Source: Macrostomum lignano
Lineage: Eukaryota
Length of the DNA: 64,000 nucleotides
Direction of reading: 5' to 3'
Assembly (NCBI GenBank): GCA_002269645.1
Contig: NIVC01002222.1
Span: 62,001 to 126,000, forward strand
This document shows, one piece after another, positions 1-56,253 of this stretch (positions within the stretch are counted from its first letter, which is position 1; every line of letters starts with the position of its first letter). The notes under the pieces were generated by a model that saw only the letters and a program-made list of their open reading frames with translations, was not told the origin of the DNA and did not search any database. The position numbers and the translations under genes were made by a program.

Positions 1-1383
1 ACAATGGAAGTGTCAGTACCCTCGACGTACCTTTTCTTGAATAGTTGTTCGAGTTGATTTCTGTGGAGATGTCCTAGACGTTGATGCCACAAATTGGCAA
101 TTTCGAGCTCTGACTTTGTAGTCGTTACTGCAGCTGTAGCTAAGTTGCAATCTACATCACACTCAAGTTGGTACAATCGATCAACTAGTGTTCCAAAGCC
201 TACTAGCTTCCTTGTTTGGTTTCGAATCCAGCACCTAGTGTGACCAAACTGAATGACATTGTTCTTAAGTGTAGCCGCACGTACACTGAACAGATTGCAG
301 GCTAGTCTAGGTACGAAAAGTACAGATCCAAGTACTGCGTTAGAACGCTCACCACCAGGGAGTCTCGTGACGATGTCCACTCGTCCAGTTCCGTAAGCTT
401 GAACTGTTCGCCCGTCTCCGAGCCCTACATTTTCCGGTTCATCGAATTCAGTGTAGTCTTTTAGAGCATTCCTTTGACAGGTCATATGTCTTGTCGCACC
501 AGAGTCAATTATCCACCGTGCAGTTGTGTCCTGAGGACCAGTTTCTTCAGAGGTAAGAAATGTAGCGGCACTATCGGCTATCTCGTTGTCCAGGTTCGGA
601 TTCGAATGACTCGTACTTTCTGCAGTTTTAGCTTTATGCAGAGTCGATTTTGAGTTTTGCTGCCTGTTGCTCACGTTGAACCTGCACTCTCTACTGAAGT
701 GTCCTTCCTTGCCACATGTGTAGCACTTAATTGGTCTGCGTCCCTTAAATTTGTCAACACGAAGAGCAGATTCCGAATCACGGGATTCGTATTTCATAGT
801 TTCACTTCGTTTCATTTCTTCATTAAGCAGTGCTTGTTGAACCGTCAGCAAAGTCAGCTCCTCTTCCTTTCGGGTCTCCAGAGCCGTAACCAGACGACTG
901 TAGCTGTCAGGTAGACTGCTAAGAAGAATCACAACCTGGTCTTCGTCAGACACAGCAGCATTAATGGACGCCAGCTTGTCAGTTAACTCCTTCAGACAGC
1001 GAAATGTGCTCCTAAACTGGAGTCCCATCAGTCATCTGCAGTCTAAATAGTTTTTTCTTCAAAAACAACTTGTTGGCAGTCGAGTCACGTTCGAAATGAC
1101 CACATAAAATTTGCCACATCTGCCTCGGATCATCATCGCATGTAGTCACAAGGTAGATGTACTCACTGCTGAGAGACAGAACTATCATTGCTGCTGCTCG
1201 CTGTTGCTGTTCCTTGAATTCATTGCGTCGTGCTTCATTTGCGTCTTGCTGAAGAACATCTTCTCCGGTAGCTATGCCCCAGAGTCTTCTTGCGATTAAG
1301 CAATGTTTCATTTGGATTTTCCACGTCATCCAATTGTCCTTCGTGAGCTTCTCTATGTGCCATTTTTCTTCGCTTGCAGCCAT
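1..1383 (-). pseudogene. Disrupted copia gag-pol ORF
   Basis: ATG at 1383 (MAASEEK). In-frame TAG at 1012-1014, then one extra base in the A-run at 1002-1004. The frame resumes as RCLKELTDKLASINAAVSDEDQVVILLSSLP and stays open to base 1. Confidence 0.88.
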
Positions 1384-1492
1384 AGCAACGTAACTGATCG
1401 ACCGAGCGATCAAGTTTCCAGATGGCACGAAGAACCAGATTACCAGAATGATCTAGTACCCTGGTACATCGAAGTACTCGCAGTGGCCTCGG

Positions 1493-1885: not shown

Positions 1886-2350
1886 TTCATATCCGACCTC
1901 TCCAATTCAATTTTGAACCGCAAGTAGGCCTTTATCTACTTGTAGTAGCATGTGCATAATTAAGGAGTGCAACATCTTTCTACTTGTTTTTTTAAAAGTA
2001 CTTGACTTTATAAATTGAGCTAATCAATTTATTCCTAGAGTCCCCAACCAGAGTGCGTATGTACCCTTGACCAAAGGGCGACTCTCAAGCTCCTAATGTC
2101 CACACACCCTCAATAAGTAGTTAATTAACGAGTCTAATTATCGCGCTACGAGTGTAAAGTTCTATTTCTCAGTGCTCGGAAAGACTTGATAAAAGTGCTT
2201 GTACACAAAAAATTGTTTAGTGCAATTTTCACCTACGATTGCCAACCAAAAAGGCGTAGACTGTACACTGTACATGTCTGACAATGAGATAGTCAATCGA
2301 TTGTCGCCCATAAGCCTCCTCCCCGTGCATACATGTACATCCCTAATGTA

Positions 2351-2645
2351 GGAGCCTGTCACTAGCTGGTCAGAGCGTCGAACTCACGACTGAAAGGTCG
2401 GGGGTTCGATTCTCGACCCACTCGGAACAATTTGTGTCCTTGAGTTAAGACACTTAACTCTGCTTTGCATTGCTTCAGTTCTAAAATGGGTGCCAGCATT
2501 AGCTGGGGTAAAATTGGTGTGTGTGGCGACCCCACCCCCCGAGTCCTTGGACTGAACATCCGTACGCAGCCTTCAGATGCGCCGCGCAATAGCTGCGGCT
2601 GAGCCATCGGTTGTCAATAAGGCAGATGTAATCGTTATTTCTATT
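2351..2645 (+). mobile_element. tRNA-derived SINE, family A, copy 1
   Basis: A-box-like TAGCTGGTCAGAGC and B-box GGTTCGATTC; central CCTTGAGTTAAGACACTTAAC...TAAAATGGG resembles the CORE (MIR-like) domain; TATT-rich tail. Homologous copies at 8898 and 55508. Confidence 0.8.
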
Positions 2646-2981
2646 AATGTACAAAAAATCAATAAAAAGTCTAATATAATCATGTTCAAAGACCAACCGG
2701 CAACAAAAACAAATATTTTATATTTTATTCAAAACAGAAATAAAAAAATATAGAAAATATGTGTCAATAAGAAATTCGATCAAACAATTAAATCAGGTAA
2801 AAAGTCACCAAAACAAAAAATGAATGGAATAAGAAATTTAGCTTAAAAAATAAGTGAAAGCATAAATAGATATCAAGAACTGTAGAAAACAAATGCAAAT
2901 AGCACACTGAGAAGCAACAAAACAGCTGATTGCAATTGTACGGAGCAGTCAACTGATCAAACTGCAATCAATGTGCCGAAG

Positions 2982-4184
2982 TCAGCAGTCCGGCTCCACA
3001 ACGATGCAGCAGCTGCCGGCATCGACAGATGAGGCGGGCTCGAACACAGCTGAGCAGAGGCGGGGCCGGTTGGGCCAGTCGCTAGTCAGGGTCACGTGAC
3101 GAAGCCGAATAGCCGCGTGGCGACCGAGAAGCTGCTGGAGGCTGGCCAGGGGAGGCTGGCACAGGCGGGGCAGGTTGGCGGCCGTCTCTGATTGGCTGAG
3201 ACTGCTGGGACTCGACTGCATCCTGACTAGGATGGTCAGCCAGCACCGGCTGTCATCGGCTCCTCCGGCGTCCATCGGATCGCACACCTGCTAGTGCAGC
3301 GGGCAGCGATGCTGGGCTAATGCTTCTGGGCTAATGGCTGGTGATGCTGAGCTAATGCTTCTGGGCTAATGACTGGTGATGCTGAGCTAATGCTTCTGGG
3401 CTAATGACTGGTGATGCTGGGCTAATTACTGGTGATGCTGGGCTAGTGGCTGGTGATGCTGGGCTAATGCTTCTGGGCTAATGGCTGGTGATGCTGAGCT
3501 AATGCTTCTGGGCTAATGGCTGATGATGCTGAGCTAATGCTTCTGGGCTAATTACTGGTGATGCTGGGCTAATGGCTGGTGATGCTGGGCTAATGCTTCT
3601 GGGCTAATGGCTGATGATGCTGAGCTAATGCTTCTGGGCTAATTACTGGTGATGCTGGGCTAATGCTTCTGGGCTAATGGCTGGTGATGCTGGACTAATG
3701 CTTCTGGGCTATTGGCTGGTGATGCTGGGCCAATGGCTGGTGATGCTGGGCTAATGCTTCTGGGCTAATATAAATAAAACAAAAGCATGACTGGCACCTG
3801 AAAAACCAGATGCTGAGAATGTTTCCGATTAGTAGTTGGAGCATCGCAGCCTGAGCACATAATGAAGTGGCCAAGCACCAGCCCCGGCCAGATTGGATGG
3901 CCCAGCTGACCGGCCCAGCCCTTGTCACCCAAATCCGCATCCTGAACTCGATAGCTATCAATAGGGTCCAAGCAGGCGGCCAGGTGAGTCATAAACCTGG
4001 CCCAGCCAACCAGCTTGGCTAGTCGAGCGCACTCAGACCGATGGCTGGACCAGTGAGCCACCTGGCAGGCGCGGCAGCAATAGCTGGCGTTCCGGCAGCG
4101 GCCGCACAGCTGACAGTCCCGACTGACCGAGCAGTTCAGGCAGATCTGCGAGCGGTGCCGCAGTTGCTGGGCGGCCGAGTCTGC
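2982..4184 (-). CDS. zf-MYND domain protein, copy 1 (exons 4184-3798 and 3287-2982; no genomic ATG before the MYND domain)
   Basis: After acceptor TTTTCCAG| the exon reads ADSAAQQLRHRSQICLNCSVSRDCQLCGRCRNASYCCRACQVAHWSSHRSEC, a complete MYND signature. A phase-0 GT-AG intron (3288-3797) joins it to a 101-aa terminal exon ending in TGA at 2982. Confidence 0.8.
3310..3775. repeat. Intronic minisatellite, ~35-bp unit GCTGGGCTAATGCTTCTGGGCTAATGGCTGGTGAT built from shorter subunits (second copy at ~9857-10322)
   Basis: Directly visible tandem units filling the MYND intron. Confidence 0.9.
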
Positions 4185-4234
4185 CTGGAAAATTGCAGGA
4201 GATGATGTCAGTCACTCTGAATAAGACAGTCCCC

Positions 4235-7200
4235 AGGATTTGAGGCGATTCTACAGGTGGATTTGGGGCGATTATACAGGTGGATTTGAAGCGATTCTCC
4301 AAGTGGATTTGGGGTGATTCTCCAGGTAAATTTGATGCGATTCTCCAAGTGGATTTGGGACGATTCTCTAGGTGGATTTGGGGCGATTCTCAGGTTGGAT
4401 TTGAGGCGATTATCCAGGTGGATTTGAGCGATTCTCCAGGTGGATTTGGGCGATTCTCCAGGTGGATTTGGGTCGATTCTCCAGGTGGATTTTGGCGATT
4501 CTCCAGGTGGATTTGGGCGATTCTCCAGGTGGATTTGGGGCGATTCTCCAGGTGGATTTGGGGCGATTATCCAGGTGGATTTGAAGCGATTCTCCAGGTG
4601 GATTTGAAGCGATTCTCCAGGTGGATTTGGGGCGATTCTCCAGGTGGATTTGGGGCGATTCTCCATGTGGATTATGGGCAATTCTGAAGGTGGTTTTGGG
4701 GCGATTCTAAAGGTGGTTTTGGGGCGATTCTAAATGTGATTTTGGGGCGATTTTAAATGTGATTTTGGGGCGATTCTACAGGTGGTTTATGGGCGATTCT
4801 AAAGGTGGTTTTCGGGCGATTATCTAGGTAGATTTGGGGCGATTCTCTAGGTGGATTTGGGGCGATTATCCAGGTAGATTTGGGGCGATTCTCCATGTGG
4901 ATTATGGGCAATTCTAAAGGTGGTTTTGGGGCGATTCTAAATGTGATTTTGGGGCGATTCTCCAGGTGGATTTGGGGCGATTATCCAGGTGGATTTGAAG
5001 CGATTCTCCAGGTGGATTTGGGGCGATTATTCTACAGGTGGTTTTGGGGCAATTATCCAGGTGGATTTGGGGCGATTCTCCAGGTGGATTTGGGGCGATT
5101 ATTCTACAGGTGGATTTGGGGCGATTCTCCAGGTGGATTTGGGGCGATTCTCCAGGTGGATTTGGGGCAATTATCCAGGTGGATTTGGGGCGATTCTCCA
5201 GGTTGATTTGGGGCAATTATCCAGGTGGATTTGGGGCAATTATCCAGGTGGATTTGGGGCGATTCTCTAGGTGGATTTGGGGCGATTATCCAGGTGGATT
5301 TGGGGCGATTCTCCAGGTGGATTTGGGGCGATTATCCAGGTGGATTTGGGGCGATTCTCCAGGTGGATTTGGGGCGATTATCCAGGTGGATTTGGGGCGA
5401 TTATCCAGGTGGATTTGGGGCGATTCTCCAGGTGGATTTGGGGCGATTATCCAGGTGGATTTGAAGCGATTCTCCAGGTGGATTTGGGGCGATTCTCCAT
5501 GTGGATTATGGGCAATTCTGAAGGTGGTTTTGGGGCGATTCTAAAGGTGGTTTTGGGGCGATTCTAAATGTGATTTTGGGGCGATTTTAAATGTGATTTT
5601 GGGGCGATTCTACAGGTGGTTTATGGGCGATTCTAAAGGTGGTTTTCGGGCGATTATCTAGGTAGATTTGGGGCGATTCTCTAGGTGGATTTGGGGCGAT
5701 TATCCAGGTAGATTTGGGGCGATTCTCCATGTGGATTATGGGCAATTCTAAAGGTGGTTTTGGGGCGATTCTAAATGTGATTTTGGGGCGATTCTAAATG
5801 TGATTTTGGGGCGATTCTCCAGGTGGATTTGGGGCGATTCTCCAGGTGGATTTGGGGCAATTATCCAGGTGGATTTGGGGCAATTATCCAGGTGGATTTG
5901 GGGCGATTCTCCAGGTGGATTTGGGGCGATTCTCCAGGTGGATTTGGGGCGATTCTCCAGGTGGATTTGGGGCGATTCTACAGGTGGTTTTGGGGCGATT
6001 CTCCAGGTGGATTTGGGGCGATTCTCCAGGTGGATTTGGGGCGATTATCCAGGTGGATTTGGGGCGATTCTCCAGGTGGATTTGGGGCGATTATCCAGGT
6101 GGATTTGGGGCGATTCTCCAGGTGGATTTGAAGCGATTCTCCAGGTGGATTTGGGGCGATTCTCCATGTGGATTATGGGCAATTCTGAAGGTGGTTTTGG
6201 GGCGATTCTAAAGGTGGTTTTGGGGCGATTCTAAATGTGATTTTGGGGCGATTTTAAATGTGATTTTGGGGCGATTCTACAGGTGGTTTATGGGCGATTC
6301 TAAAGGTGGTTTTCGGGCGATTATCTAGGTAGATTTGGGGCGATTCTCTAGGTGGATTTGGGGCGATTATCCAGGTAGATTTGGGGCGATTCTCCATGTG
6401 GATTATGGGCAATTCTAAAGGTGGTTTTGGGGCGATTCTAAATGTGATTTTGGGGCGATTCTCCAGGTGGATTTGGGGCGATTATCCAGGTGGATTTGAA
6501 GCGATTCTCCAGGTGGATTTGGGGCGATTATTCTACAGGTGGTTTTGGGGCAATTATCCAGGTGGATTTGGGCAGTGTTGGGCAAGTTACTCAAAAAAAG
6601 TAACTTGCGTTACTGTAACTTAAGTTACCAATTTTTAAAAAGTAACTTACGTTAGCCTAGTAACTTTAGACAAAAACCCGGTAACTTTTAAGTTACTGTC
6701 CGTTACTCACTTCCGTTACCCATGTTATTAACAAAATTTTCTGCTTTTTTCACATTGCATTTTTTTACATTGTTGTTACCGAAATTTGCCATTGGGCATT
6801 GGGATTAACCGATTAACAGACAGAGACAGCAATTGGCGACACGATGTGAGGCAAGTAGAAGGACCGATGGGCAATGGCAATCAATAATTAAAATTATAAA
6901 TGATAAAATAAACGAATATCAATAATTCAATAGAGTAAAATAAATAACTGTATAAAATGGTGTAGTGTACTGCAGTGCCAGTGGAGGGACTTGTGGAGGC
7001 TACAGACGAATTTCTTTCTTTGGTTGTTTGTTTGAATCAAACTTGAAAATTTTTAGTAAATTGAAAATGAGAAATAAAAATTGAAAAATAAAATGAAAGG
7101 CGAAAATATTTTACTGAAATTATAACTAAGCAAAACATGTTTTAAGTATTTCTTCATTAATTAAAGCGCAATACCAAATGATACTATTCACTTAATTTTG

Positions 7201-8775
7201 AATTAGGAATGAAAAATGCAAAAAAATGTGACAACCGGCGTAATAGCTAAGCATTTCAGTTTTAAATTTAAATATTGCGATTGTTGCAAAGTAACTGTAA
7301 CGGACTTCTGAAATTTGAGTAACTTACCGTTACTCCGTTACTAAAATAAAAAAGTAACTTGCGTAAGGAACGCTTTACGAAAAAGTAACTTGCGTTACCA
7401 TTTGCAAGTTACTCGGTAACGGAAGTGCCCAACACTGGATTTGGGGCGATTCTCCAGGTGGATTTGGGGCGATTATTCTACAGGTGGATTTGGGGCGATT
7501 CTCCAGGTGGATTTGGGGCGATTCTCCAGGTGGATTTGGGGCAATTATCCAGGTGGATTTGGGGCGATTCTCCAGGTGGATTTGGGGCAATTATCCAGGT
7601 GGATTTGGGGCAATTATCCAGGTGGATTTGGGGCGATTCTCTAGGTGGATTTGGGGCGATTATCCAGGTGGATTTGGGGCGATTCTCCAGGTGGATTTGG
7701 GGCGATTATCCAGGTGGATTTGGGGCGATTCTCCAGGTGGATTTGGGGCGATTATCCAGGTGGATTTGGGGCGATTATCCAGGTGGATTTGGGGCGATTC
7801 TCCAGGTGGATTTGGGGCGATTATCCAGGTGGATTTGAAGCGATTCTCCAGGTGGATTTGGGGCGATTCTCCATGTGGATTATGGGCAATTCTGAAGGTG
7901 GTTTTGGGGCGATTCTAAAGGTGGTTTTGGGGCGATTCTAAATGTGATTTTGGGGCGATTTTAAATGTGATTTTGGGGCGATTCTACAGGTGGTTTATGG
8001 GCGATTCTAAAGGTGGTTTTCGGGCGATTATCTAGGTAGATTTGGGGCGATTCTCTAGGTGGATTTGGGGCGATTATCCAGGTAGATTTGGGGCGATTCT
8101 CCATGTGGATTATGGGCAATTCTAAAGGTGGTTTTGGGGCGATTCTAAATGTGATTTTGGGGCGATTCTAAATGTGATTTTGGGGCGATTCTCCAGGTGG
8201 ATTTGGGGCGATTCTCCAGGTGGATTTGGGGCAATTATCCAGGTGGATTTGGGGCAATTATCCAGGTGGATTTGGGGCGATTCTCCAGGTGGATTTGGGG
8301 CGATTCTCCAGGTGGATTTGGGGCGATTCTCCAGGTGGATTTGGGGCGATTCTACAGGTGGTTTTGGGGCGATTCTCCAAGTGGATTTGGGGCGATTCTC
8401 CAGGTGGATTTGGGGCGATTATCCAGGTGGATTTGGGGCGATTCTCCAGGTGGATTTGGGGCGATTATCCAGGTGGATTTGAAGCGATTCTCCAGGTGGA
8501 TTTGAAGCGATTCTCCAGGTGGATTTGGGGCGATTATTCTACAGGTGGTTTTGGGGCAATTATCCAGGTGGATTTGGGGCGATTCTCCAGGTGGATTTGG
8601 GGCGATTATTCTACAGGTGGATTTGGGGCGATTCTCCAGGTGGATTTGGGGCGATTCTCCAGGTGGATTTGGGGCAATTATCCAGGTGGATTTGGGGCGA
8701 TTCTCCAGGTGGATTTGGGGCAATTATCCAGGTGGATTTGGGGCAATTATCCAGGTGGATTTGGGGCGATTCTGG
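4235..8775. repeat. 23-bp satellite GGTGGATTTGGGGCGATTCTCCA with 1501-bp higher-order duplication
   Basis: Well over 100 tandem units. A diagnostic variant block CTCCATGTGGATTATGGGCAATTCTGAAGG occurs at 4661, 5495, 6162 and 7869. The many ORFs called here are repeat artefacts. Confidence 0.97.
6573..7437. mobile_element. Non-autonomous hAT-type DNA transposon (MITE, 865 bp) inserted in the satellite
   Basis: 12-bp TIR CAGTGTTGGGCA / TGCCCAACACTG; perfect 8-bp TSD GATTTGGG (6565-6572, 7438-7445); many subterminal GTAAC/GTTAC motifs; no ORF. Confidence 0.92.
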
Positions 8776-8897
8776 GGACAATCGATTGCCAACCAAAAAG
8801 GCGTAGACTGTACACTGTACATGTCTGACAATGAGATAGTCAATCGATTGTCGCCCATAAGCCTCCTCCCCGTGCATACATGTACATCCCTAATGTA

Positions 8898-9192
8898 GGA
8901 GCCTGTCACTAGCTGGTCAGAGCGTCGAACTCACGACTGAAAGGTCGGGGGTTCGATTCTCGACCCACTCGGAACAATTTGTGTCCTTGAGTTAAGACAC
9001 TTAACTCTGCTTTGCATTGCTTCAGTTCTAAAATGGGTGCCAGCATTAGCTGGGGTAAAATTGGTGTGTGTGGCGACCCCACCCCCCGAGTCCTTGGACT
9101 GAACATCCGTACGCAGCCTTCAGATGCGCCGCGCAATAGCTGCGGCTGAGCCATCGGTTGTCAATAAGGCAGATGTAATCGTTATTTCTATT
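8898..9192 (+). mobile_element. tRNA-derived SINE, family A, copy 2 (part of the duplication)
   Basis: Matches 2351-2645. Confidence 0.8.
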
Positions 9193-9528
9193 AATGTACA
9201 AAAAATCAATAAAAAGTCTAATATAATCATTTTCAAAGACCAACCGGCAACAAAAACAAATATTTTATATTTTATTCAAAACAGAAATAAAAAAATATAG
9301 AAAATATGTGTCAATAAGAAATTCGATCAAACAATTAAATCAGGTAAAAAGTCACCAAAACAAAAAATGAATGGAATAAGAAATTTAGCTTAAAAAATAA
9401 GTGAAAGCATAAATAGATATCAAGAACTGTAGAAAACAAATGCAAATAGCACACTGAGAAGCAACAAAACAGCTGATTGCAATTGTACGGAGCAGTCAAC
9501 TGATCAAACTGCAATCAATGTGCCGAAG

Positions 9529-10731
9529 TCAGCAGTCCGGCTCCACAACGATGCAGCAGCTGCCGGCATCGACAGATGAGGCGGGCTCGAACACAGCTGA
9601 GCAGAGGCGGGGCCGGTTGGGCCAGTCGCTAGTCAGGGTCACGTGACGAAGCCGAATAGCCGCGTGGCGACCGAGAAGCTGCTGGAGGCTGGCCAGGGGA
9701 GGCTGGCACAGGCGGGGCAGGTTGGCGGCCGTCTCTGATTGGCTGAGACTGCTGGGACTCGACTGCATCCTGACTAGGATGGTCAGCCAGCACCGGCTGT
9801 CATCGGCTCCTCCGGCGTCCATCGGATCGCACACCTGCTAGTGCAGCGGGCAGCGATGCTGGGCTAATGCTTCTGGGCTAATGGCTGGTGATGCTGAGCT
9901 AATGCTTCTGGGCTAATGACTGGTGATGCTGAGCTAATGCTTCTGGGCTAATGACTGGTGATGCTGGGCTAATTACTGGCGATGCTGGGCTAGTGGCTGG
10001 TGATGCTGGGCTAATGCTTCTGGGCTAATGGCTGGTGATGCTGAGCTAATGCTTCTGGGCTAATGGCTGATGATGCTGAGCTAATGCTTCTGGGCTAATT
10101 ACTGGTGATGCTGGGCTAATGGCTGGTGATGCTGGACTAATGCTTCTGGGCTAATGGCTGATGATGCTGAGCTAATGCTTCTGGGCTAATTACTGGTGAT
10201 GCTGGGCTAATGCTTCTGGGCTAATGGCTGGTGATGCTGGACTAATGCTTCTGGGCTATTGGCTGGTGATGCTGGGCCAATGGCTGGTGATGCTGGGCTA
10301 ATGCTTCTGGGCTAATATAAATAAAACAAAAGCATGACTGGCACCTGAAAAACCAGATGCTGAGAATGTTTCCGATTAGTAGTTGGAGCATCGCAGCCTG
10401 AGCACATAATGAAGTGGCCAAGCACCAGCCCCGGCCAGATTGGATGGCCCAGCTGACCGGCCCAGCCCTTGTCACCCAAATCCGCATCCTGAACTCGATA
10501 GCTATCAATAGGGTCCAAGCAGGCGGCCAGGTGAGTCATAAACCTGGCCCAGCCAACCAGCTTGGCTAGTCGAGCGCACTCAGACCGATGGCTGGACCAG
10601 TGAGCCACCTGGCAGGCGCGGCAGCAATAGCTGGCGTTCCGGCAGCGGCCGCACAGCTGACAGTCCCGACTGACCGAGCAGTTCAGGCAGATCTGCGAGC
10701 GGTGCCGCAGTTGCTGGGCGGCCGAGTCTGC
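9529..10731 (-). CDS. zf-MYND domain protein, copy 2 (exons 10731-10345 and 9834-9529)
   Basis: Same translation and splice sites as copy 1. Confidence 0.8.
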
Positions 10732-10781
10732 CTGGAAAATTGCAGGAGATGATGTCAGTCACTCTGAATAAGACAGTCCCC

Positions 10782-11275
10782 AGGATTTGAGGCGATTCTA
10801 CAGGTGGATTTGGGGCGATTATACAGGTGGATTTGAAGCGATTCTCCAAGTGGATTTGGGGTGATTCTCCAGGTAAATTTGATGCGATTCTCCAAGTGGA
10901 TTTGGGACGATTCTCTAGGTGGATTTGGGGCGATTCTCAGGTTGGATTTGAGGCGATTATCCAGGTGGATTTGAGCGATTCTCCAGGTGGATTTGGGCGA
11001 TTCTCCAGGTGGATTTGGGTCGATTCTCCAGGTGGATTTTGGCGATTCTCCAGGTGGATTTGGGCGATTCTCCAGGTGGATTTGAAGCGATTCTCCAGGT
11101 GGATTTGGGGCGATTATCCAGGTGGATTTGAAGCGATTCTCCAGGTGGATTTGAAGCGATTCTCCAGGTGGATTTGGGGCAATTCTCCAGGTGGCTTTGG
11201 GGCGATTATCCAGGTGGATTTGGGGCGATTCTCCAGGTGGCTTTGGGACAATTCTCCAGGTGGTTTTGGGACAAA
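10782..11275. repeat. Short array of the 23-bp GGTGGATTTGGGGCGATTCTCCA satellite
   Basis: About 21 units, ending in variants GGCTTTGGGACAATTCTCCA. Confidence 0.95.
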
Positions 11276-11571
11276 TATCCCCCCTCCTGCTGAACATCAG
11301 AGAAAGAACACAAACAACTCAGACGAACAGTTTCAACAGATGTACAAAACCCCTTAGGAACAGATTTATTTATTTAACCAAATCCACAAGAAGCCGTCAC
11401 GTTAAAGATCACCCAGTGCTTAGTATTCAGTAATAACAACAGACTCAAATGGGCTTTGAAATGGACAGAATATGTTTATTATAAAAACAGGAGGCAAACT
11501 GCCATGCAACTGAGACGGGTGGTACATGTAGAGACGAAAATTGGAATATGAAGTAACAGCAGAGCAGTTGG

Positions 11572-13130
11572 ATACCGGATGTGGGTCATTACACTACTGG
11601 ATGTGGGCCATCACACTAACCGGATGTGGGCCAGTACATTAACCAGATTTAGGCCATTACATTAACTGGATGTTGGTCATTACACTAACCGGATGTTGGT
11701 CATTACACTAACCGGATGTGGGTCATTACACTAACCGGATGTGGGTCATTACACTAACCGGATGTGGGTCATTACACTAACCGGATGTGAGTCATTACAC
11801 TTACCGGATGTGGGTGATTACACTTACCGGATGTGGGTCATTACACTAACCGGATGTGGGTCATTACACTAACCGGATGTGGGTCATTACACTAACCGGA
11901 TGTTGGTCATTACACTAACCGGATGTGGGTCATTACACTAACCGGATGTGGGTCATTACACTTACCGGATGTGGGTCATTACACTAACCGGATGTCGGTC
12001 ACTACACTAACCGGATGTGGGTCATTACACTTACCGGATGTGGGTCATTACACTTACCGGATGTGGGTCATTACACTTACCGGATGTGGGTCATTACACT
12101 AACCGGATGTTGGTCATTACACTTACCGGATGTGGGTCATTACACTTACCGGATGTGGGTCATTACACTAGCCGGATGTGGGTCATTACACTAACCGGAT
12201 GTGGGTCATTACACTAACCGGATGTGGGTCATTACACTAACCGGATGTGGGTCATTACACTTACCGGATGTGGGTCATTACACTAACCGGATGTGGGTCA
12301 TTACACTTACTGGATGTGGGTCATTACACTAGCCGGATGTGGGTCATTACACTAAACAGGTGTGGGTCATTACATTAACTGGATGTGAGTCATTACACTA
12401 ACCGGATGTGGGTCATTACACTAACCGGATGTGGGTCATTACACTTACCGGATGTGGGTCATTACACTAACCGGATGTGGGTCACTACACTAACCGGATG
12501 TGGGTCATTACACTTACCGGATGTGGGTCATTACACTTACCGGATGTGGGTCATTACACTTACCGGATGTGGGTCATTACACTAACCGGATGTTGGTCAT
12601 TACACTAGCCGGATGTGGGTCATTACACTAGCCGGATGTGGGTCATTACACTAACCGGATGTGGGTCATTACACTAACCGGATGTGGGTCATTACACTTA
12701 CCGGATGTGGGTCATTACACTAACCGGATGTGGGTCACTACACTAACCGGATGTGGGTCATTACACTTACCGGATGTGGGTCATTACACTTACCGGATGT
12801 GGGTCATTACACTTACCGGATGTGGGTCATTACACTAACCGGATGTGGGTCATTACACTTACCGGATGTGGGTCATTACACTAGCCGGATGTGGGTCATT
12901 ACACTAGCCGGATGTGGGTCATTACACTAACCGGATGTGGGTCATTACACTAACCGGATGTGGGTCATTACACTTACCGGATGTGGGTCATTACACTAAC
13001 CGGATGTGGGTCATTACACTTACCGGATGTGGGTCATTACACTAGCCGGATGTGGGTCATTACACTAAACAGGTGTGGGTCATTACATTAACTGGATGTG
13101 AGTCATTGCACTTACCGGATGTGGGTCATT
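11572..13130. repeat. 23-bp minisatellite CCGGATGTGGGTCATTACACTAA
   Basis: About 67 tandem units, downstream of the hnRNP stop codon. Confidence 0.97.
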
Positions 13131-13622
13131 ACTTCATAAGGAAACACGAGACAGGCAGACTCAGCAGGAAGGGGCAATACAAAAACAATAGAGCATGCAG
13201 GTATGAGTACACAGAGACACTAGCTGGGGTCGCCCCATCCCACCAAGATAAACGGCGCACAACAGTGTTAAATGCGGCGCCCAGACAGACACGCAAAAAT
13301 TTGGTTCGAAGCGATATAATTTGGAGATAACTAATAATTACCAATTATTTAACAGACTAATAGTTAATGAGACACAACAGGAAACAATGTTTCTAATCGT
13401 TAGTTAATAAATGAACAAGTTCACACATTAACAAGCCCGCTAGCATTGAACAAATAGTCGCATTAAGCACAATATAGATAGAAGAAGTACATTATGTTAC
13501 ACTAGACGGGTGTGCAAGCGAAACTCGTCCACAATTCAGCTGGACTAAGAAGCTTGCTGGACAATACGAAAACCCGCGCCTCCAAGACGGAACCCCACCG
13601 GTGCGGACAGCGGCCGCGGATC

Positions 13623-16600
13623 TCAGTTCGTAAAGATTTCAATGTAGCGAGTGCCTGCATCGGAGTTGCGAAGGGGCTAAGTTGTTAGGGGCCGTGATAG
13701 TTTGAGGTATTGAATAAAACATTCCAATTTTTTGGAAGGCTTTACAGGATGGTTAGGGCGTTTGGAAATAATTCATGGGGATCTAGAGCATGTGGGGATA
13801 ATTTATGGGGATCTAGGGGATTTGGGGATAATTCATGGGGATCGAAGGCGTTTGGGAATAATTCTTCATGGGAATCTAGGGGATTTTGGGATAATTCATG
13901 GGATCTAGGGGATCTGGGGATAATTCATGGGGTTCTAGGGCATTTGAGGGTTAATAACTCATGGGATTTCGTGGGGATTGAGGATAAGTAAAAAGATATT
14001 AACCAGACACCATGAGCCGCAACTCACCGATAACTTTGCCATTGTACTCGGCAGCCTGGCGGACCTCATCAGCTGACTGAAAGAAGGCGTCGGCCTCGCC
14101 GGAGCTCCGACCGCCGGGGTCGCGCCCGATCTGCACCCGGGTGGGCCGCAGCGGCGCGAAGAAGTCGTAGATTTCGGCTTCGCCGGCCGACCAGGGCAGG
14201 CCGCGCAGGTGGACGCGGAAGCCGTCGCCGACGCCCGGGCCGACACCGCCGCGGTAGCCGCCGGGCTGGTGCATCGGCTGGTGCATCAGCTGGGGCGGCC
14301 CGCCCCCGCCAGCTCCGCGCCCGCCTCCGCCGGCCCTGTGCAGGAACAGGTCGACATAGCGGCTGCCGAGGTGCTGCTTGTTCTTCTCCATCGCCCGGCG
14401 ACAGTCGGCTTCCGAATCAAAATCGACGTCGGCCTCGCCGCTTGGCCGGCCGTCCGGGTTGAAGCGAATTTCCACGTGGGCGGCGGTGAGCGGGGCAAAG
14501 AACTGCCGGATGTCCGATTCGCTGGCCGAGTACGGCAGGCCACGCATGTGCACCCAGTAACCCGTGGTCGACGCCCAATCGCTGCCAGGCGGCCCGCCGC
14601 CGCCGCCGCCGCCAAAGTCGCGGCGCATCCCGCCCGGGCCGCCGCCACCGTAGGGACTCGGCCTTGCGCCGCCGTAGCCGCCGGGGCCACCGCGGCCGCC
14701 GCGCATCGAGCCGCCGCCACTGGCCATAGCGCCAGAATAGTCGCCCATCTGAGGCCCGTAGTCGTAATCGTAGCCGTAGCCACCGCCGTAGGGTGGCGGC
14801 ACCGCTGCGCCTCCGGCCGCATACGGGTCGCCTGTGAGAGTGCGATGGGACAAGCAAAAGATGGAGTCTCACTATGAGATAACAGTCCCGAAATCTCACC
14901 ATGAGATTAAAGTCCCGAAACCTCACTATGAGATAACAGTCCCGAAACCTCACCGAGATTAAAGTACCGAAATCTCACTAAGAGATAGTGAGAAATCCCG
15001 AAATCTCACCATGAGATTAAAGTACCGAAATCTCACTAAGAGATAACAGTCCTAAAATCTCACCATGAGATTAAAGTACCGAAATCTCACTAAGAGATAA
15101 CAGTCCCGAAATCTCACCATGAGATTAAAGTACCGAAATCTCACTAAGAGATAACAGTCCTGAAATCTCACCATGAGATTAAAGTACCGAAATCTCACTA
15201 TGAGATAACAGTCCCGAAATCTCACCATGAGATAACGGTCCCAAAATTTTACAATGAGATAACAGACCCGAAATCTCACTATGAGATAACAGTCCCGAAA
15301 TCTCACTATGAGATAACAGTCCCGAAATCTCACTATGAGATAACAGTCCCGAAATCTCACTATGAGATAACAGTCCCGAAATCTCACTATGAGATAACAG
15401 TCCCGAAATCTCACTATGAGATAACAGTCCCGAAACCTCACTATGAGATAACAGTCCCGAAACCTCACTATGAGATTAAAGTACCGAAATCTCACTATAA
15501 TATAACAGTCCTGAAATCTCACTATAATATAACAGTCCTGAAATCTCACTATGAGATTAAAGTACCGAAACCTCACTATGAGATAACAGTTCCGAAATCT
15601 CACTATGAGATAATGAAATAACAGCCTTGAAATTTCAGTGGTTGCAGGTAACACAGGTACAATAGGAAAGAAGTGACTCTAGGCGACTCTGGGGCAGTAA
15701 AGTCGTATCTGAGGCATACTAGAGTCGCTGTATAGTCAGAGTTGCATCTAAAGCCTATCTGCTGTATGAATTAGAATCGCATCTCGCAATAATAAAAAAA
15801 ACTCTGTTTAGTCTACTCAAGTTAGTAGAAAGTTAAGCGCTAATTACTCAAAAGTCGCCTCTCCGTCGCATTTGGGTCGTTAAAAAGCTACAAGTGTCGC
15901 TCAAGAGTCGATAGAGTCACTAGTGGGGACAGTGGGGAAGGGCGGGGGGATATTCTAGGCACATCAAATGCGAACAAACGCCTCACCTCCGGACGCCATC
16001 ATCTGCTGCCTATTAGCCTCAGCGTATGCCTCAGCCATAGAGCTGGGGAACAGCTCAATGTAGCGGCTGCCCATATTCTGCCGGTTGCAGCTGCTCAAAG
16101 CACTGCTGGCAGTCTCCGGGGTGTCGAACTGCACGTAGGCCTCGCCGCTAGGCCTGCCGTCCTGGTTGTACACCATCAGGATGCCGTCCTTCACCACGTG
16201 AAAGCCGTGAAAGAACTCTCTGATGCCGTCGAAATCCGCGGCAAACGGCAGGCCGCGCATCCGCAGCACCGGCTCCCGGTTGTGCCCGCCGTAGGCGCCG
16301 CCGCCGCCGCTGCTGTTCGCTGGCCGGCCAGTGGGTCCGGGGACTCCGGCGCCAGGGACCATGCGAGCTAGCTCGGCCTCGCTGGACTGGAACAGCTCCA
16401 CATAGCGCCTGCCCATGTGCTGCTTGTCGTGCCTCATAGCCGCAGCGGCGTCGTCGGGTGTCTCAAAGACGACATAGGCCTCGCCGCTGGGCCGGCCAAG
16501 GTGGTCCTGGGTCAGGTGCACACCCTGCTGGCCCCGGCTGATGCTGCAGTCGTCAAAGAATTTCACAACATCGCTAGCCGTGGATTCGAATGGCAGGCCG

Positions 16601-16659
16601 CGCATTCGAACTACACAGGACGGCCCGCTGGACGAATTGTTGGCATTGTTATAGCGCAT
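13623..16659 (-). CDS. hnRNPF/H: hnRNP F/H-family RNA-binding protein with four quasi-RRMs (exons 16659-15987, 14831-14028, 13654-13623; 502 aa)
   Basis: Motifs VVRMRGLPF...GEAYVVF...RYVELF, VLRMRGLPF...RYIELF, VHMRGLPY...GEADVDF...RYVDLF and VHLRGLPW...GEADAFF...(G)TRYIEIF; Gly/Tyr-rich linker; two phase-1 introns with GTGAG donors and CAG acceptors; the last exon completes qRRM4 and ends in TGA at 13623-13625. Confidence 0.93.
13755..13985. repeat. ~30-bp minisatellite (GGGGATAATTCATGGGGATCTAG...) in hnRNP intron 2
   Basis: 30-bp period visible at 13794/13824. Confidence 0.85.
14868..15612. repeat. 27-bp minisatellite GAGATAACAGTCCCGAAATCTCACTAT in hnRNP intron 1
   Basis: Tandem units; these produce the spurious RFRDCYLIV ORF. 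Confidence 0.95.
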
Positions 16660-19232
16660 GGCTCTGGGGATCGGCTGGCTGAAGTATTTCGTAAGTTTTT
16701 CTATATACAAAAGGAGAGTTTAACAGATTTAACAACTTTGCACTTACATGTACAAATCTTATTTTCAAATACAAAATTATGTACTTATTATTTCGAAAAT
16801 GGTTATTGCACTTTATATCTCTAACCTTAAGCTTGCTTAAGCATTGTAATTAAATGCTCTAATTTTAATCTTCTGCAATTTAAATAAGTTTTATACGAAA
16901 ATCATATATCAAAGATAAATGAAAAGTCCTTTTAAAAGAGTTTATCAAAGAGTCGAACCTACTATGTATCTATGCTATAATGCATAAAAGGTGAAGGTTC
17001 CAACTTATAATATAAGTAACCATTTGTGGGATGTATACTTAAAAGAATAGTCTAGTTATTAAGGAAAATTAATTGTTAACTAATCATTTTTAAAAGTAAA
17101 TAAACAATTCAGTTATTGGTAAAAGTGTTGGCATTAAAACAAAAAAATCTTAACTTATTAAGTTTCTTTGAGTTGACTAAAAGTTAATTAGAATATGCTA
17201 ATCTATTATCAATAACACAGAATATACAGAAACTTAGCACTTTCATTTACAAAAACAAACTTTAAAATGCATTGTCTGCATTTTCATTCTTTTAGCTAGC
17301 ACAGAGAGGTCATTGAAGTAATTTACAATTTATTAAGTAACACATACTAAGAAAAAAATTGTAATATAACTTATCAAACATATTTTTGTTCTTTCTTGTC
17401 TTTGGTCTCATTGACATTTTCATTATCATAAATGACAAATTTGTTGTTAATTTACTAATTATTAATGCAAATTCATTAATCAACAAAAAATCTTAATGAC
17501 ATTTCATTAATGTTAATGAAAATCTAAATGCTTATTAATGGATTGTTACCCAATACTGCTACCTAGATTGTTATAATATGGTCATGGTTAGGTTAATCAT
17601 ATTATTAGTTGTTTTATTTTTTAGAGGAAATGTTATAATTCATTATGATATATACAAGTTATGATAATTATACAAGTTATTTTAGCCAAGCTATTTATTA
17701 TTCATTAAAATAAAAAATACATTTTTATGATAAAAAATATTGCAAAGTATTTATTTTAGATTATAGTCTACTTTTTGACATCTAATTATAATTTATAATT
17801 TATATACTGAAAATCAACCTTATGATTGGAATAAATTCTGAAAATGTATGGATGCCTATCAAGGGTCTAGCAAAAATGCACCAAAAGGTCACTCTAAAGT
17901 ATATAGACTATATCAATGGGTCATCAAGCAATGGTGGCACACCAAAAAACAGCATTGTTATGCAGAGCACACCTAATAACTTTGCCAACTTTTGAAATTT
18001 TGACATTTAGGCCATTCTGACATGGATTCCAAGCACTATACAAGTACCAAGTGTTGCATTGCATTATACCATACTGCACTAAGTGCTACCTTACAGAAAA
18101 TACACCACATCTCAGGGTTATTTTAAAAATGTCTAGATAGCTATCTGCCATTTAGAAACTTTTTTAATAAGGAAAAGCAAACTAGGATAAGGGCTTCCAA
18201 AATGCCAAATTACTAAAAAACATAGGCAGTGAAAAGTTTAGATCCCCTAATGTATCCCCTAGACTAAGTTTATCTTTGATTGGGACATTAAAATTTCTAA
18301 ATTAACAAAGTTTAATAATACAATGTTCTAATAAAAACAACTTGAGCATACAATACACTTTGTGACTTTCCAACTATATGTAAAGTCAATCACTATCTAT
18401 ATTTTATTGATCCAAATGATCTAACTATGTACAAACATAATAAAAAACATCTAGGCACAAATGAAGACAAAGTTCTATAGCTAGCATGGCATTAGGCCTA
18501 ATGATGATTTTTTTGACTTTCATAAAATTCAAAGTTCCTTAGAGCAAGTTCTTCTAGTAGTGATATCAATTTTACCCAAGGAAATGCTTTGACAATTTCC
18601 TATATTAGGTGACCCATAACTATGCTAAATAGGGTCTAATGCTATTTTTAAGGCTAAAAAAATTTAAATAATTAAACTTGTTTTTGTTTGTTTGTGAAAA
18701 ATCTAGTGTCAAAATAATTTAATGTAGAAAACTAAGACATTGCCACTTTAGTAAGCCTATTAATTAGTAGGTATATGGTCATTTTGTCTGCTATTAGGCC
18801 TAGTTTGTCTACTAGCAAACAAAATGACTACTCATTAGTAGGTACATTTATTGTTTGTTTAGCATGCTGCATGATATTATATAACATTAATATTGATTTA
18901 TTATAGTTATTCTTTCTTCTATTTTTTCACTGTGAACTCTTATTTTGACCTATATATGCTAATACCTCTAAAAACTATATGAACTTCGAATTTTGTATGA
19001 AATTTCTACCAAAACATACATTCATTTTAATAAAAGTAGCACTAAATAGTAAAAAATAGATGCTTATTAGTAGCAAATATTTTATTGTATACAATACAGT
19101 AGACAAACATCTACCTTAGCAATGCTTTGATAGAATGATTAGGCCTACTCTTAATTTTCAAGTTAAAAATTCAATTTATAATTATAGAAACTTTAAATGC
19201 ATAGGCCCAATCTAGGCAAAAAGCATAACATC

Positions 19233-27461: not shown

Positions 27462-28814
27462 CTATTGCATCTTGTTTGTCGGGGAACTGAAATTGATCGT
27501 GGTTGGCCCGTAGAAGTTTAGTATAGGGGTGGACCATTGTTGACTTAGAGCCAAAGCCTGCAGTCCAGAAATATTGGAGTTGCCATTGGCAATTGCTGTT
27601 TCAACCTTACTCACGCCGCTCATTTTGGCTGCAGCAGTGGGCTCTCCATATAGTACTGCCGACATGTTCTTCTCTGACTTACGGATGTCAATGTAGGACC
27701 TGTCAGCCTTTTCGATAATCCTTCCAGTCTTCTGGCTTGCTATTTCCTTACTGATGCCGCCTTCCACCAACCTAGTCTTGCAGGTCCGACATAGACTACT
27801 GTTCATGATAGGTCTGGTCGTACTGCCGGCTTCAATCTGCTTGCCAGAGAACAGATTCTTCACAACGTTTTCAATTGTATGCACACCCATTGGTTGACTA
27901 CGATACCATATATCAGATGTCGGCGCCTTGATCGGTGTCAGATAGAACGCAGAGTGACCCTTGAGTCCAAATTGCTCCGGCCAGTGACAAATGTAGGTCT
28001 TATACATCGTGATGACACATTTGTCTGGGTCGCCATTCAAATAGATCCTGGTTGTTTTCGGCTCAACGTGTGCCTTATGCAAACCAACTCTCCCATTATT
28101 CGACATTCGCTCGGTGTACACCAGACATTCAGTGTCATTTTCCTTGGCAAGCACAAGCTGCGATCGCTCACCAAATTCTAACACGCGATGTTCAGCACTC
28201 ACTCTGAGCGATAGGTGCAGACCTAAGTGGTACAGCAGGGTATTCACCAGCTGTGTCAGATTAGACATTCCAAAATGTCCCTCTGCCCAGAGTTGCACTT
28301 TTTCGTCTAGGCCGATTACCCTCGCTCGCTTTGGTGTAAGATGAAAACCTGATTTGGCACTCAATTTCATGGCGGCATCGATGCACTGCCTGGTTAGGAT
28401 AAACTCGTTGTCCTTGAAGATGGACCAATCATGCAGAAACTTTGTTTGTAGGTGGAACTGTATACTGGTGACAAAACCTTTGATTGTGGCAGGCGGGTAC
28501 ATATCTCCGTTGTCCTTGCGCAGTTCAAGCAGAAAGCACTGCAGCATGTAGTCCCATTCCTTCTTGCTCCACTCGAACATATCCTTCACAACTTTCAACT
28601 GAGCAGTTTGGCACACTCGCCAGTCAGTATACCAAGCGCACAGTTTATTCCAATTGCTACGAACCTTTGTGGCCGTTGTTTTTGGAATTCGCAAGTCTCT
28701 AAATTCGGCAAGCTGGACGTCAATGTTGGTGCTAGTGCTTTGCACTGTAGACGCTTCTTCATTGGTAATTGTTCGCATCACTTCCATTACATCGTTAGCA
28801 GTTAGCTCCTCCAT
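27462..28814 (-). CDS. DUF3504 / Crypton-type tyrosine-recombinase-fold protein (450 aa, single exon), catalytic motifs degenerate
   Basis: Family motifs FLLELRKDNGDMYPP, LWAEGHFG...QLVNTLLY, LSLRVSAEHRVL, LVYTERMSNN, CVITMYKTY, FYLTP, WYRSQPMGVHTIEN, NSSLCRTCKTRL, KTG...SY. Uninterrupted ORF with AAAATGG start context. Confidence 0.88.
   Translation of the reverse strand: MEELTANDVMEVMRTITNEEASTVQSTSTNIDVQLAEFRDLRIPKTTATKVRSNWNKLCAWYTDWRVCQTAQLKVVKDMFEWSKKEWDYMLQCFLLELRKDNGDMYPPATIKGFVTSIQFHLQTKFLHDWSIFKDNEFILTRQCIDAAMKLSAKSGFHLTPKRARVIGLDEKVQLWAEGHFGMSNLTQLVNTLLYHLGLHLSLRVSAEHRVLEFGERSQLVLAKENDTECLVYTERMSNNGRVGLHKAHVEPKTTRIYLNGDPDKCVITMYKTYICHWPEQFGLKGHSAFYLTPIKAPTSDIWYRSQPMGVHTIENVVKNLFSGKQIEAGSTTRPIMNSSLCRTCKTRLVEGGISKEIASQKTGRIIEKADRSYIDIRKSEKNMSAVLYGEPTAAAKMSGVSKVETAIANGNSNISGLQALALSQQWSTPILNFYGPTTINFSSPTNKMQ

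Positions 28815-30463: not shown

Positions 30464-38419
<7,956 letters not shown>

Positions 38420-56191: not shown

Positions 56192-56253
<62 letters not shown>

What the first reader, a model, noticed from the sequence alone, without database searches (positions are those of the whole stretch)
2982..4200. MYND gene without a genomic start codon: start probably supplied by the spliced-leader AUG
Seen: the first visible exon starts at a clean acceptor (CAATTTTCCAG|GCA GAC TCG GCC) in phase 0, has no ATG before the MYND finger, and only satellite DNA lies upstream; no convincing coding exon was found between 10732 and 13620. Established: flatworm spliced-leader exons end in AUG, and this AUG can initiate translation (shown in Schistosoma). 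Inference: SL-AUG + GCA GAC... gives MADSAAQQLRHRSQICLNC..., a natural-looking N-terminus with G at +4. The gene would depend completely on trans-splicing.
Basis: partly seen in the sequence, partly recalled or inferred. Interest (0 to 1): 0.78.

Follow-up and report, generated by a model that had tools for sequence, protein, structure and literature searches.

The report
Flatworm gene borrowing its start codon
In the flatworm Macrostomum lignano, two tandem copies of a small MYND zinc-finger gene have no start codon of their own and most likely take it from the AUG at the end of the trans-spliced leader RNA, a mechanism already known in flatworms; a sister copy elsewhere in the genome has a normal ATG at exactly that spot.

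Summary
The window is Macrostomum lignano (assembly Mlig_3_7). On the minus strand lies a two-exon MYND-finger gene (exon 1 4184..3798, intron 3797..3288, exon 2 3287..2982), with a 99.8% identical tandem copy 6,547 bases upstream (10731..9529).

- **No genomic start:** exon 1 opens right after aatTTCCAG|GCAGAC. An in-frame TGA lies 10 codons upstream, and no ATG precedes the finger.
- **Spliced leader:** the published M. lignano leader ends in ATG, and the published trans-acceptor motif YTNCAG fits this site.
- **Gene models:** the RNA-seq-based NCBI models are all "partial". One starts exactly at the first base after CAG.
- **Sister loci:** one homeologous locus (L002) has ATG in place of CAG and so encodes MADSAAQQ directly. 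Another (L001) has CTG.
- **Selection:** the coding sequence appears to be under purifying selection (dN/dS about 0.2).

I saw no SL-junction reads, so trans-splicing at this site is inferred. Leader-AUG initiation is known from Schistosoma, where more than 40 cDNAs need it, so this is a new member of a known kind. The CAG/CTG/ATG series at the start position is the only fresh element. The gene may be the downstream cistron of a repeat-inflated operon behind an hnRNP F/H-like gene.

The parts
4185..4207 (-). Pyrimidine-rich tract and acceptor of copy 1 (catcatctcctgcaattTTCCAG|). This is the proposed SL trans-splice acceptor. The CAG occupies 4187-4185.
   Evidence: Sequence read. Fits the [T/C]TNCAG motif reported for 9,551 M. 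lignano trans-splice sites (PMC8629364).
4212..4214 (-). In-frame TGA, 10 codons upstream of the first codon (GCA).
   Evidence: in-frame translation upstream.
3798..4184 (-). Exon 1 of copy 1: 129 codons, ADSAAQQ...HLVFQ, phase 0 at both ends.
   Evidence: Matches NCBI proteins PAA59836/PAA59837.
4029..4142 (-). MYND zinc finger (residues 15-52, C-x2-C...H-x3-C).
   Evidence: Pfam PF01753, E=9.8e-07, 29.2 bits, above the gathering cut-off. It is the only part of the protein with homologs among 1.84 billion representatives.
3288..3797 (-). Intron (GT..AG) filled with a 35-bp satellite.
   Evidence: The junction VFQ|VCDPM is used in the NCBI proteins.
2982..3287 (-). Exon 2 of copy 1: 101 codons plus the TGA stop (2984-2982).
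2724..2729 (-). AATAAA, the likely poly(A) signal of copy 1 (3' UTR about 260 nt).
   Evidence: Sequence read. Function is inferred.
4236..8773 (.). 23-bp satellite (about 100 plus 58 units) forming the presumed outron or intercistronic region of copy 1.
   Evidence: Tandem Repeats Finder.
9529..10731 (-). Copy 2 of the gene: exon 1 10731..10345, intron 10344..9835, exon 2 9834..9529. Its coding sequence is identical to copy 1. The NCBI CDS starts at 10731, the first base after the CAG.
10783..11270 (.). The same 23-bp satellite upstream of copy 2.
11365..11374 (-). AATAAATAAA in the unique stretch between the two satellites. Candidate poly(A) signal of the upstream RRM gene.
   Evidence: Conserved in L001 and L002. 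Function is inferred.
13623..16671 (-). Upstream same-strand gene, hnRNP F/H-like with RRM domains (506 aa model). Possible first cistron of an operon.
   Evidence: Its model starts next to CTTCAG|.

Best explanation
The two window copies of this Macrostomum-specific MYND-finger gene are transcribed as a pre-mRNA that runs through the upstream 23-bp satellite. That transcript may be polycistronic, starting at the upstream hnRNP F/H-like gene. The 35-nt spliced leader (…TTGCAUG) is then trans-spliced onto the acceptor TTCCAG| at 4185/4184 (copy 1) and 10732/10731 (copy 2). The last three bases of the leader, AUG, fall in phase 0 with GCA GAC UCG…. The mature mRNA therefore reads AUG-GCA-GAC and encodes MADSAAQQLRHRSQIC…, a 231-aa protein whose MYND finger starts at residue 16.

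Shown here: the gene structure, the lack of a genomic start, the fit to the acceptor motif, the organism and its leader sequence, the position of the gene-model 5' ends, and the ATG in the homeolog.

Inferred: that SL reads really join at this base, that the leader AUG is the codon used by ribosomes, and the operon arrangement.
For: 1. Organism: Macrostomum lignano, NCBI PAA59836/PAA59837, 100% identity.
2. Leader: its SL is CGGTCTCTTACTGCGAAGACTCAATTTATTGCATG. About 30% of genes are trans-spliced, and the acceptor motif is [T/C]TNCAG (PMC8629364). The site here is TTCCAG.
3. No genomic start: there is no ATG between the in-frame TGA and the MYND finger. There is also no upstream phase-0 ATG exon with a GTRAG donor in any of four loci.
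4. Gene models: Mlig_3_7 models are cut at SL-read peaks by TBONE, and ORFs are called by TransDecoder (PMC5730564). All four copies are annotated 5'-partial. The CDS of copy 2 starts exactly at the base after CAG, and that of copy 1 starts 3 nt later. The neighbouring RRM gene shows the same behaviour: in L001 and L002 its partial CDS starts directly after a CTTCAG| site. A partial CDS start therefore marks the 5' end of the mRNA.
5. Homeolog: L002 reads ttttcATGgcagac where the window reads ttttcCAGgcagac. The same N-terminus MADSAAQQ is thus genome-encoded there.
6. Conservation steps at that point. Comparing the window with L001: 0 differences in the first 58 coding bases, 1.4% over the whole CDS, 8-10% plus an indel in the 51 bases upstream, and 2.8-4.4% in the other non-coding flanks.
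7. Selection: 6 synonymous and 4 non-synonymous changes, dN/dS about 0.2, p=0.016. All four reading frames are intact.
8. Precedent: in Schistosoma mansoni the leader AUG is in frame in 28% of trans-spliced mRNAs, and more than 40 cDNAs need it (Cheng et al. 2006, as cited in PMC9851317).
Against: - No RNA read, cDNA or peptide was available to me. The protein collection holds only the four NCBI models and no transcript-derived product.
- The supplements I could search do not mention the gene.
- Three of the four gene models start 1-3 nt (copy 1, L002) or 10-12 nt (L001) downstream of the junction rather than exactly on it.
- Reads multi-map among these near-identical copies, so the models do not show which copy is expressed.
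- A second AG lies 4 nt downstream (CAG G CAG|). Splicing there would put the leader AUG out of frame, giving a 15-codon ORF.
- The protein has no homologs outside the MYND finger, so its function, and even its status as a translated protein, rest on only 10 substitutions.
Confidence: 0.7

Rival explanations
1. The window copies are start-less, non-functional duplicates. The working gene would be the homeolog L002, which has its own ATG. The CAG would simply be a decayed start codon, and the partial gene models in the window would come from multi-mapped reads.
For: L002 has a genomic ATG at the start position. The copies are near-identical, so reads multi-map; STAR was run allowing up to 1,000 multimaps (PMC5730564). 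L001 with CTG may also lack a start.
Against: - ATG to CAG needs two substitutions, and it lands on a perfect YTNCAG acceptor behind a pyrimidine tract.
- L002's own model is also 5'-partial and excludes its ATG. That is hard to explain unless SL-trimmed reads begin at or near GCAGAC.
- The window ORFs are intact in both copies, and dN/dS is about 0.2.
- The most parsimonious history of the triplet (CAG-CTG-ATG) does not start from ATG.
Confidence: 0.12
2. Translation starts without the leader AUG. It would begin either at the in-frame CUG nine codons upstream (4211-4209), on an mRNA that keeps this stretch, or at Met65 downstream, giving a protein without the MYND finger.
For: An in-frame CTG exists between the TGA and GCA. 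L001 has CTG at the start position itself. An upstream acceptor-like site, tctgatgttcag|, lies at about 11291.
Against: - The CUG stretch is the most diverged part of the locus, and a 3-nt indel changes its length between homeologs.
- The gene models do not include it.
- Starting at Met65 would discard the only conserved domain, yet the finger carries just one conservative change (V20A).
Confidence: 0.08
3. A cis-spliced upstream exon with its own ATG exists but is hidden in or beyond the satellites.
For: The acceptor would serve equally well for cis-splicing. Satellites hamper read mapping and transcript assembly (PMC8629364).
Against: - No phase-0 ATG exon with a GTRAG donor exists between the upstream gene and the acceptor in four loci. 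The only candidates are 6-codon satellite units with a poor GTGTAA donor.
- The RNA-based models show no such exon in any copy.
- L002's ATG sits at the exon boundary itself.
Confidence: 0.05
4. The CAG/CTG/ATG differences are errors of assembly or polishing in a repeat-rich polyploid genome, and all copies are really the same.
For: The assembly is PacBio-based and the genome highly duplicated. L001 and L002 are mosaic in divergence.
Against: - The two window copies agree with each other.
- Substitution errors are uncommon in polished long-read assemblies (my own general knowledge).
- The neighbouring 3-nt indel and several substitutions co-segregate with the locus type.
Confidence: 0.05

Closest known systems
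Flatworm mRNAs that use the 3'-terminal AUG of the spliced leader as initiator methionine (Cheng, Cohen, Ndegwa & Davis 2006, J Biol Chem 281:733, Schistosoma mansoni; 'slORFs' in PMC9851317)
   Same: The leader ends in AUG. The acceptor lies directly before the second codon. The leader AUG is in frame. No genomic AUG lies upstream of the functional domain.
   Different: The species is different: a free-living macrostomid. I found no paper that lists such genes for it. [quoted passage not shown] Trans-splicing and translation are inferred here, not shown. A homeolog with a genome-encoded ATG at the same position is present in the same genome.
Macrostomum lignano operons with repeat-inflated intercistronic regions (Ustyantsev & Berezikov 2021, PMC8629364)
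   Same: A same-strand upstream gene is followed by a presumably trans-spliced gene. The 2.9-kb gap is mostly satellite. After removing the satellites and the likely 3' UTR, about 100 bp remain, which is the reported mode for operons. This is well under the paper's 1-kb threshold.
   Different: The poly(A) site of the upstream gene and a continuous polycistronic transcript were not observed. The second MYND copy would extend the operon across a 4.5-kb satellite.
zf-MYND (PF01753) proteins
   Same: A complete C4-C2HC finger above the Pfam gathering score.
   Different: Only the finger is homologous to anything. The remaining roughly 175 residues are orphan sequence, so the protein belongs to no named MYND subfamily (SMYD, ZMYND, PDCD2, EGLN1).

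Membership tests
SL-AUG-initiated flatworm mRNA (Cheng et al. 2006 class) | The organism has a spliced-leader RNA whose exon ends in AUG. | tested here: met
   Organism identified as M. lignano. Leader sequence ends ...TTGCATG (PMC8629364).
SL-AUG-initiated flatworm mRNA (Cheng et al. 2006 class) | [quoted passage not shown] | tested here: met
   TTCCAG| fits YTNCAG. No phase-0 ATG exon with a GTRAG donor upstream in four loci.
SL-AUG-initiated flatworm mRNA (Cheng et al. 2006 class) | The leader AUG is in frame with the main ORF, and no genomic AUG precedes the functional domain. | tested here: met
   Phase 0. TGA 10 codons upstream. First ATG is Met65, after the finger.
SL-AUG-initiated flatworm mRNA (Cheng et al. 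2006 class) | cDNA or RNA-seq reads with the leader joined at this acceptor. | not testable with these tools
   Indirect evidence only: RNA-based, SL-cut gene models are 5'-partial and start at the junction, or 1-3 nt from it. No transcript-derived proteins in the collection.
SL-AUG-initiated flatworm mRNA (Cheng et al. 2006 class) | Translation initiates at the leader AUG. | not testable with these tools
   Supported indirectly by the homeolog that encodes ATG-GCA-GAC in the genome.
zf-MYND (PF01753) | Profile match above the gathering score, with the full Cys/His pattern. | tested here: met
   29.2 bits against 22.7; profile positions 1-39 of 39.
M. lignano operon, downstream cistron | Same-strand upstream gene and a repeat-adjusted intergenic distance below 1 kb. 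| tested here: met
   From the RRM stop (13623) to the acceptor (10732) is 2.9 kb, of which about 2.05 kb is satellite. Criterion from PMC8629364.
M. lignano operon, downstream cistron | A polycistronic precursor transcript, with the downstream gene trans-spliced. | not testable with these tools
   No RNA data available.
Processed or decayed pseudogene | A disrupted frame, or neutral evolution (dN/dS about 1). | tested here: not met
   Four intact ORFs. 6 synonymous and 4 non-synonymous changes over 166 and 524 sites, p=0.016. The intron is retained.

The most novel reading that the evidence does not exclude
Within one polyploid genome, the same start position of the same gene exists in three states. 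One is a genome-encoded ATG (L002). One is a CAG that removes the ATG but creates a trans-splice acceptor delivering the leader's AUG to the identical position (the two window copies). The third is CTG (L001), the one-step intermediate between them. This would be a snapshot of a gene switching between a cis-encoded and a leader-supplied initiator codon. It would also suggest a simple mutational route (ATG <-> CTG <-> CAG behind a pyrimidine tract) by which flatworm genes become dependent on, or freed from, trans-splicing.
Probability: 0.35. Interest if true: 0.55.

Novelty: new member of a known kind. Interest (0 to 1): 0.33.

Why it matters
For annotation, it shows that '5'-partial' models in the M. 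lignano genome can be complete genes whose first codon lies on another RNA. Such models should be completed by adding the leader AUG, not discarded or extended.

For biology, the mechanism itself is 20 years old. The CAG/CTG/ATG series among homeologs is a compact natural experiment on how a start codon can move between the gene and the spliced leader. It is directly testable with existing RNA-seq data and with the transgenesis available in this species.

Tried and rejected
- **Transcript-derived proteins.** I looked for contigs carrying MADSAAQQ. The homology search found only the four NCBI models.
- **Gene identifiers in the literature.** I searched for Mlig003296 and Mlig015444 in full texts and in the supplements of four M. 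lignano papers. Nothing was found.
- **Papers not held.** Cheng et al. 2006 and Wasik et al. 2015 are not in the library.
- **Leader copies nearby.** A scan of the window for a copy of the leader (an SL RNA gene or a retro-copied SL-mRNA) gave no match with up to 3 mismatches. The bases before L002's ATG are shared with the other copies and do not look leader-derived. cDNA-mediated conversion is therefore not supported.
- **Hidden upstream exon.** A scan for a hidden upstream ATG exon found none with a consensus donor.
- **RNA genes.** ARAGORN and Rfam on the window gave no hits.
- **Other gene models.** To survey other models in the window I looked up the DUF3504 ORF, but it is not on record. 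I therefore made no estimate of how common leader-AUG genes are in this genome.
- **Full-length homologs.** A search of 1.84 billion representatives matched only the MYND finger.

Full report
**What is there.**
The finding lies on the minus strand.
- Exon 1 runs 4184..3798 (129 codons, ADSAAQQ…HLVFQ).
- A GT..AG intron, filled with a 35-bp satellite, runs 3797..3288.
- Exon 2 runs 3287..2982 (101 codons plus TGA).
- An AATAAA lies at 2729..2724.
- Residues 15-52 form a complete MYND finger (PF01753, 29.2 bits against a cut-off of 22.7).
- A block of about 2.45 kb (2251-4700) recurs 6,547 bases further on at 99.6-100% identity. This gives a second gene copy at 10731..9529 with an identical coding sequence.

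**Checking the observation.**
- The exon opens after ctcctgcaattttccag|GCA GAC TCG.
- Reading the same frame upstream meets TGA at 4214-4212. There is no ATG, GTG or TTG in between, only a CTG at 4211-4209.
- The next in-frame ATG is Met65, after the finger.
- Upstream is 51 bases of unique sequence and then a 23-bp satellite: 4236-8773 for copy 1 and 10783-11270 for copy 2.
- Between the acceptor and the next gene upstream, no ATG-initiated phase-0 segment ends at a GTRAG donor, in the window or in two related loci.

**Whose genome.**
The spliced product is 100% identical to 'hypothetical protein BOX15_Mlig003296g2, partial [Macrostomum lignano]'. Its 90% cluster holds four NCBI proteins, all labelled partial:
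- Mlig003296g1 and g2, the two window copies, on NIVC01002222.1;
- Mlig015444g1, on NIVC01001398.1 (my locus L001);
- Mlig015444g2, on NIVC01002190.1 (my locus L002).

**What is known for this species.**
- M. lignano has one 35-nt leader, CGGTCTCTTACTGCGAAGACTCAATTTATTGCATG.
- About 30% of its genes are trans-spliced.
- The motif enriched at trans-acceptors is [T/C]TNCAG.
- About 15% of genes lie in operons. Their intergenic distances cluster near 100 bp once repeats are subtracted, and the authors used a threshold of 1 kb (PMC8629364).
- The Mlig_3_7 gene models were built from RNA-seq. The TBONE pipeline cut them at peaks of SL-trimmed reads, and TransDecoder assigned the ORFs (PMC5730564).
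- For Schistosoma mansoni, the leader AUG is in frame in 28% of trans-spliced mRNAs, and more than 40 cDNAs need it (Cheng et al. 2006, as summarised in PMC9851317; see also PMC12582326).

**How the locus fits.**
- The site TTCCAG| matches YTNCAG.
- The NCBI CDS of copy 2 starts at the first base after the CAG. That of copy 1 starts 3 nt later.
- TransDecoder extends an ORF to the first full codon of a transcript when no stop intervenes. A partial CDS start therefore marks the 5' end of the mRNA to within 2 nt.
- The neighbouring RRM gene serves as a control. In L001 and L002 its partial CDS starts directly after a CTTCAG| site, although its real ATG lies a few codons downstream.
- The MYND models thus place the 5' end of the mRNA at the junction or within 1-3 nt of it, except in L001, where it lies 10-12 nt downstream.

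**The homeologs.**
Aligning the four copies around the junction (raw reads) shows the following triplets before GCAGAC:
- window, both copies: ttttcCAGgcagac;
- L001: ttttcCTGgcagac;
- L002: ttttcATGgcagac.

In L002 the genome itself encodes ATG GCA GAC TCG = MADS…, exactly the N-terminus predicted from leader AUG plus exon 1. This is the strongest support available without RNA, because it fixes the start of the protein at this codon.

The triplet is also a hot spot.
- L001 and L002 differ at only about 0.25% of nearby positions, yet one of those differences is the C/A that makes or breaks the ATG.
- The window and L001 differ by 1.4% in the coding sequence, yet they differ here too.
- The shortest history is CAG - CTG - ATG (two steps). 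An ATG ancestor needs three steps. The direction cannot be set without an outgroup.

**Is the gene alive?**
- All four reading frames are intact.
- Between the window and L001 there are 6 synonymous and 4 non-synonymous changes over 166 and 524 sites (dN/dS about 0.2; binomial p=0.016).
- Divergence is 0 in the first 58 coding bases and 8-10% plus a 3-nt indel in the 51 bases just upstream. It is 1.2-4.4% in the other non-coding flanks. Constraint therefore begins at the GCA codon.
- Only the finger has homologs among 1.84 billion representative proteins. The rest is orphan sequence.

**Upstream context.**
- The next gene on the same strand is an hnRNP F/H-like RRM gene (CDS 16671..13623).
- Its stop is followed by 490 unique bases, a 1.56-kb satellite (13132-11574), and 285 unique bases that contain AATAAATAAA (11374-11365) and a GU-rich stretch.
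- Then come the 23-bp satellite and the acceptor. The unique parts are conserved in L001 and L002.
- If that AATAAA is the RRM poly(A) signal, the distance to the MYND acceptor is about 630 bp, of which about 490 are satellite. That leaves roughly 100-140 bp, the operon mode reported for this species.

I therefore think the MYND gene is probably a downstream cistron of a repeat-inflated operon. That would explain why 'only satellite lies upstream'. This step is an inference.

**Rivals.**
- **Start-less dead duplicates, with L002 as the working gene.** This is possible because reads multi-map. However, ATG to CAG needs two hits that happen to build a perfect acceptor. L002's own model also excludes its ATG, and the window ORFs are intact and constrained.
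- **Initiation at the upstream CUG or at Met65.** The CUG stretch is the least conserved part of the locus. Starting at Met65 would discard the finger.
- **A hidden cis exon.** None was found, and none appears in any RNA-based model.
- **Assembly error at the triplet.** This is unlikely, since the two window copies agree and linked variants co-segregate.
- **An out-of-frame acceptor.** A tandem AG lies 4 nt downstream (CAG-G-CAG|). It could give an out-of-frame, 15-codon product in a fraction of transcripts.

**Comparison and novelty.**
Leader-AUG initiation is an established flatworm mechanism, so this is a new member of a known kind in a species where such genes have not, to my knowledge, been listed. 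What is not textbook is the three-state start position among homeologs. That deserves a look in the existing RNA-seq data.

**Limits.**
I saw no SL-junction read, cDNA or peptide. The papers by Cheng et al. and Wasik et al. were not available. I made no genome-wide count.

Noticed in passing
window 4185-4187 and 10732-10734; L001 9986-9988; L002 9995-9997: The triplet just before the first codon has three states among homeologous copies: CAG, CTG and ATG. The surrounding coding sequence is 98.6-99.9% identical.
   Followed up: partly
window 2251-4700 versus 8798-11247: A block of about 2.45 kb holds the MYND gene, about 700 bases downstream of it and about 500 bases of the 23-bp satellite. It is tandemly duplicated at 99.6-100% identity with a 6,547-bp period. 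This is either a very recent duplication or an assembly duplication.
   Followed up: partly
L001 3960-5666 versus L002 4119-5869, compared with L001 8939-12600 versus L002 9129-12600: L001 and L002 are about 2.3% diverged over the RRM gene but only about 0.25% over the MYND gene. The mosaic pattern suggests gene conversion or recombination between homeologs.
   Followed up: partly
window 16671-16680 (- strand); L001 4670-4700; L002 4865-4895: The hnRNP F/H-like gene model starts right after CTTCAG|. There the leader AUG would be out of frame and would open a uORF of about 10 codons overlapping the gene's own ATG. This illustrates the opposite consequence of an AUG-ending leader.
   Followed up: partly
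window about 2362-2440 and 8909-8990: A tRNA-like remnant lies downstream of each MYND copy: GGGTCGAGAATCGAACC is the reverse complement of a T-arm. It is probably a tRNA-derived SINE. ARAGORN and Rfam gave no hit.
   Followed up: partly
window 11574-13132, 13754-13955, 14867-15613: Three further satellites (23, 30 and 27 bp) sit in the 3' UTR and introns of the RRM gene. Many satellites across the window (for example 38.6-40 kb, 40.5-41.4 kb, 45.4-46.8 kb, 47.5-50 kb) produce long spurious ORFs in several frames.
   Followed up: no
window 1012-1428 (-), 27462-28814 (-), 61674-62348 (+): Mobile-element ORFs: a copia-type gag (PF14223), a 450-aa DUF3504/QRICH1-domain ORF that is not in the protein collection, and a gag-like ORF with CCHC knuckles.
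   Followed up: partly
window 30356-38419 (+), 44022-45074 (+), 53000-59200 (-): Exons of other host genes, judged from the ORF translations only: a MAGI-like protein with GuK, WW and PDZ regions, an ADCK/aarF-like kinase, and an Ig-domain protein.
   Followed up: no
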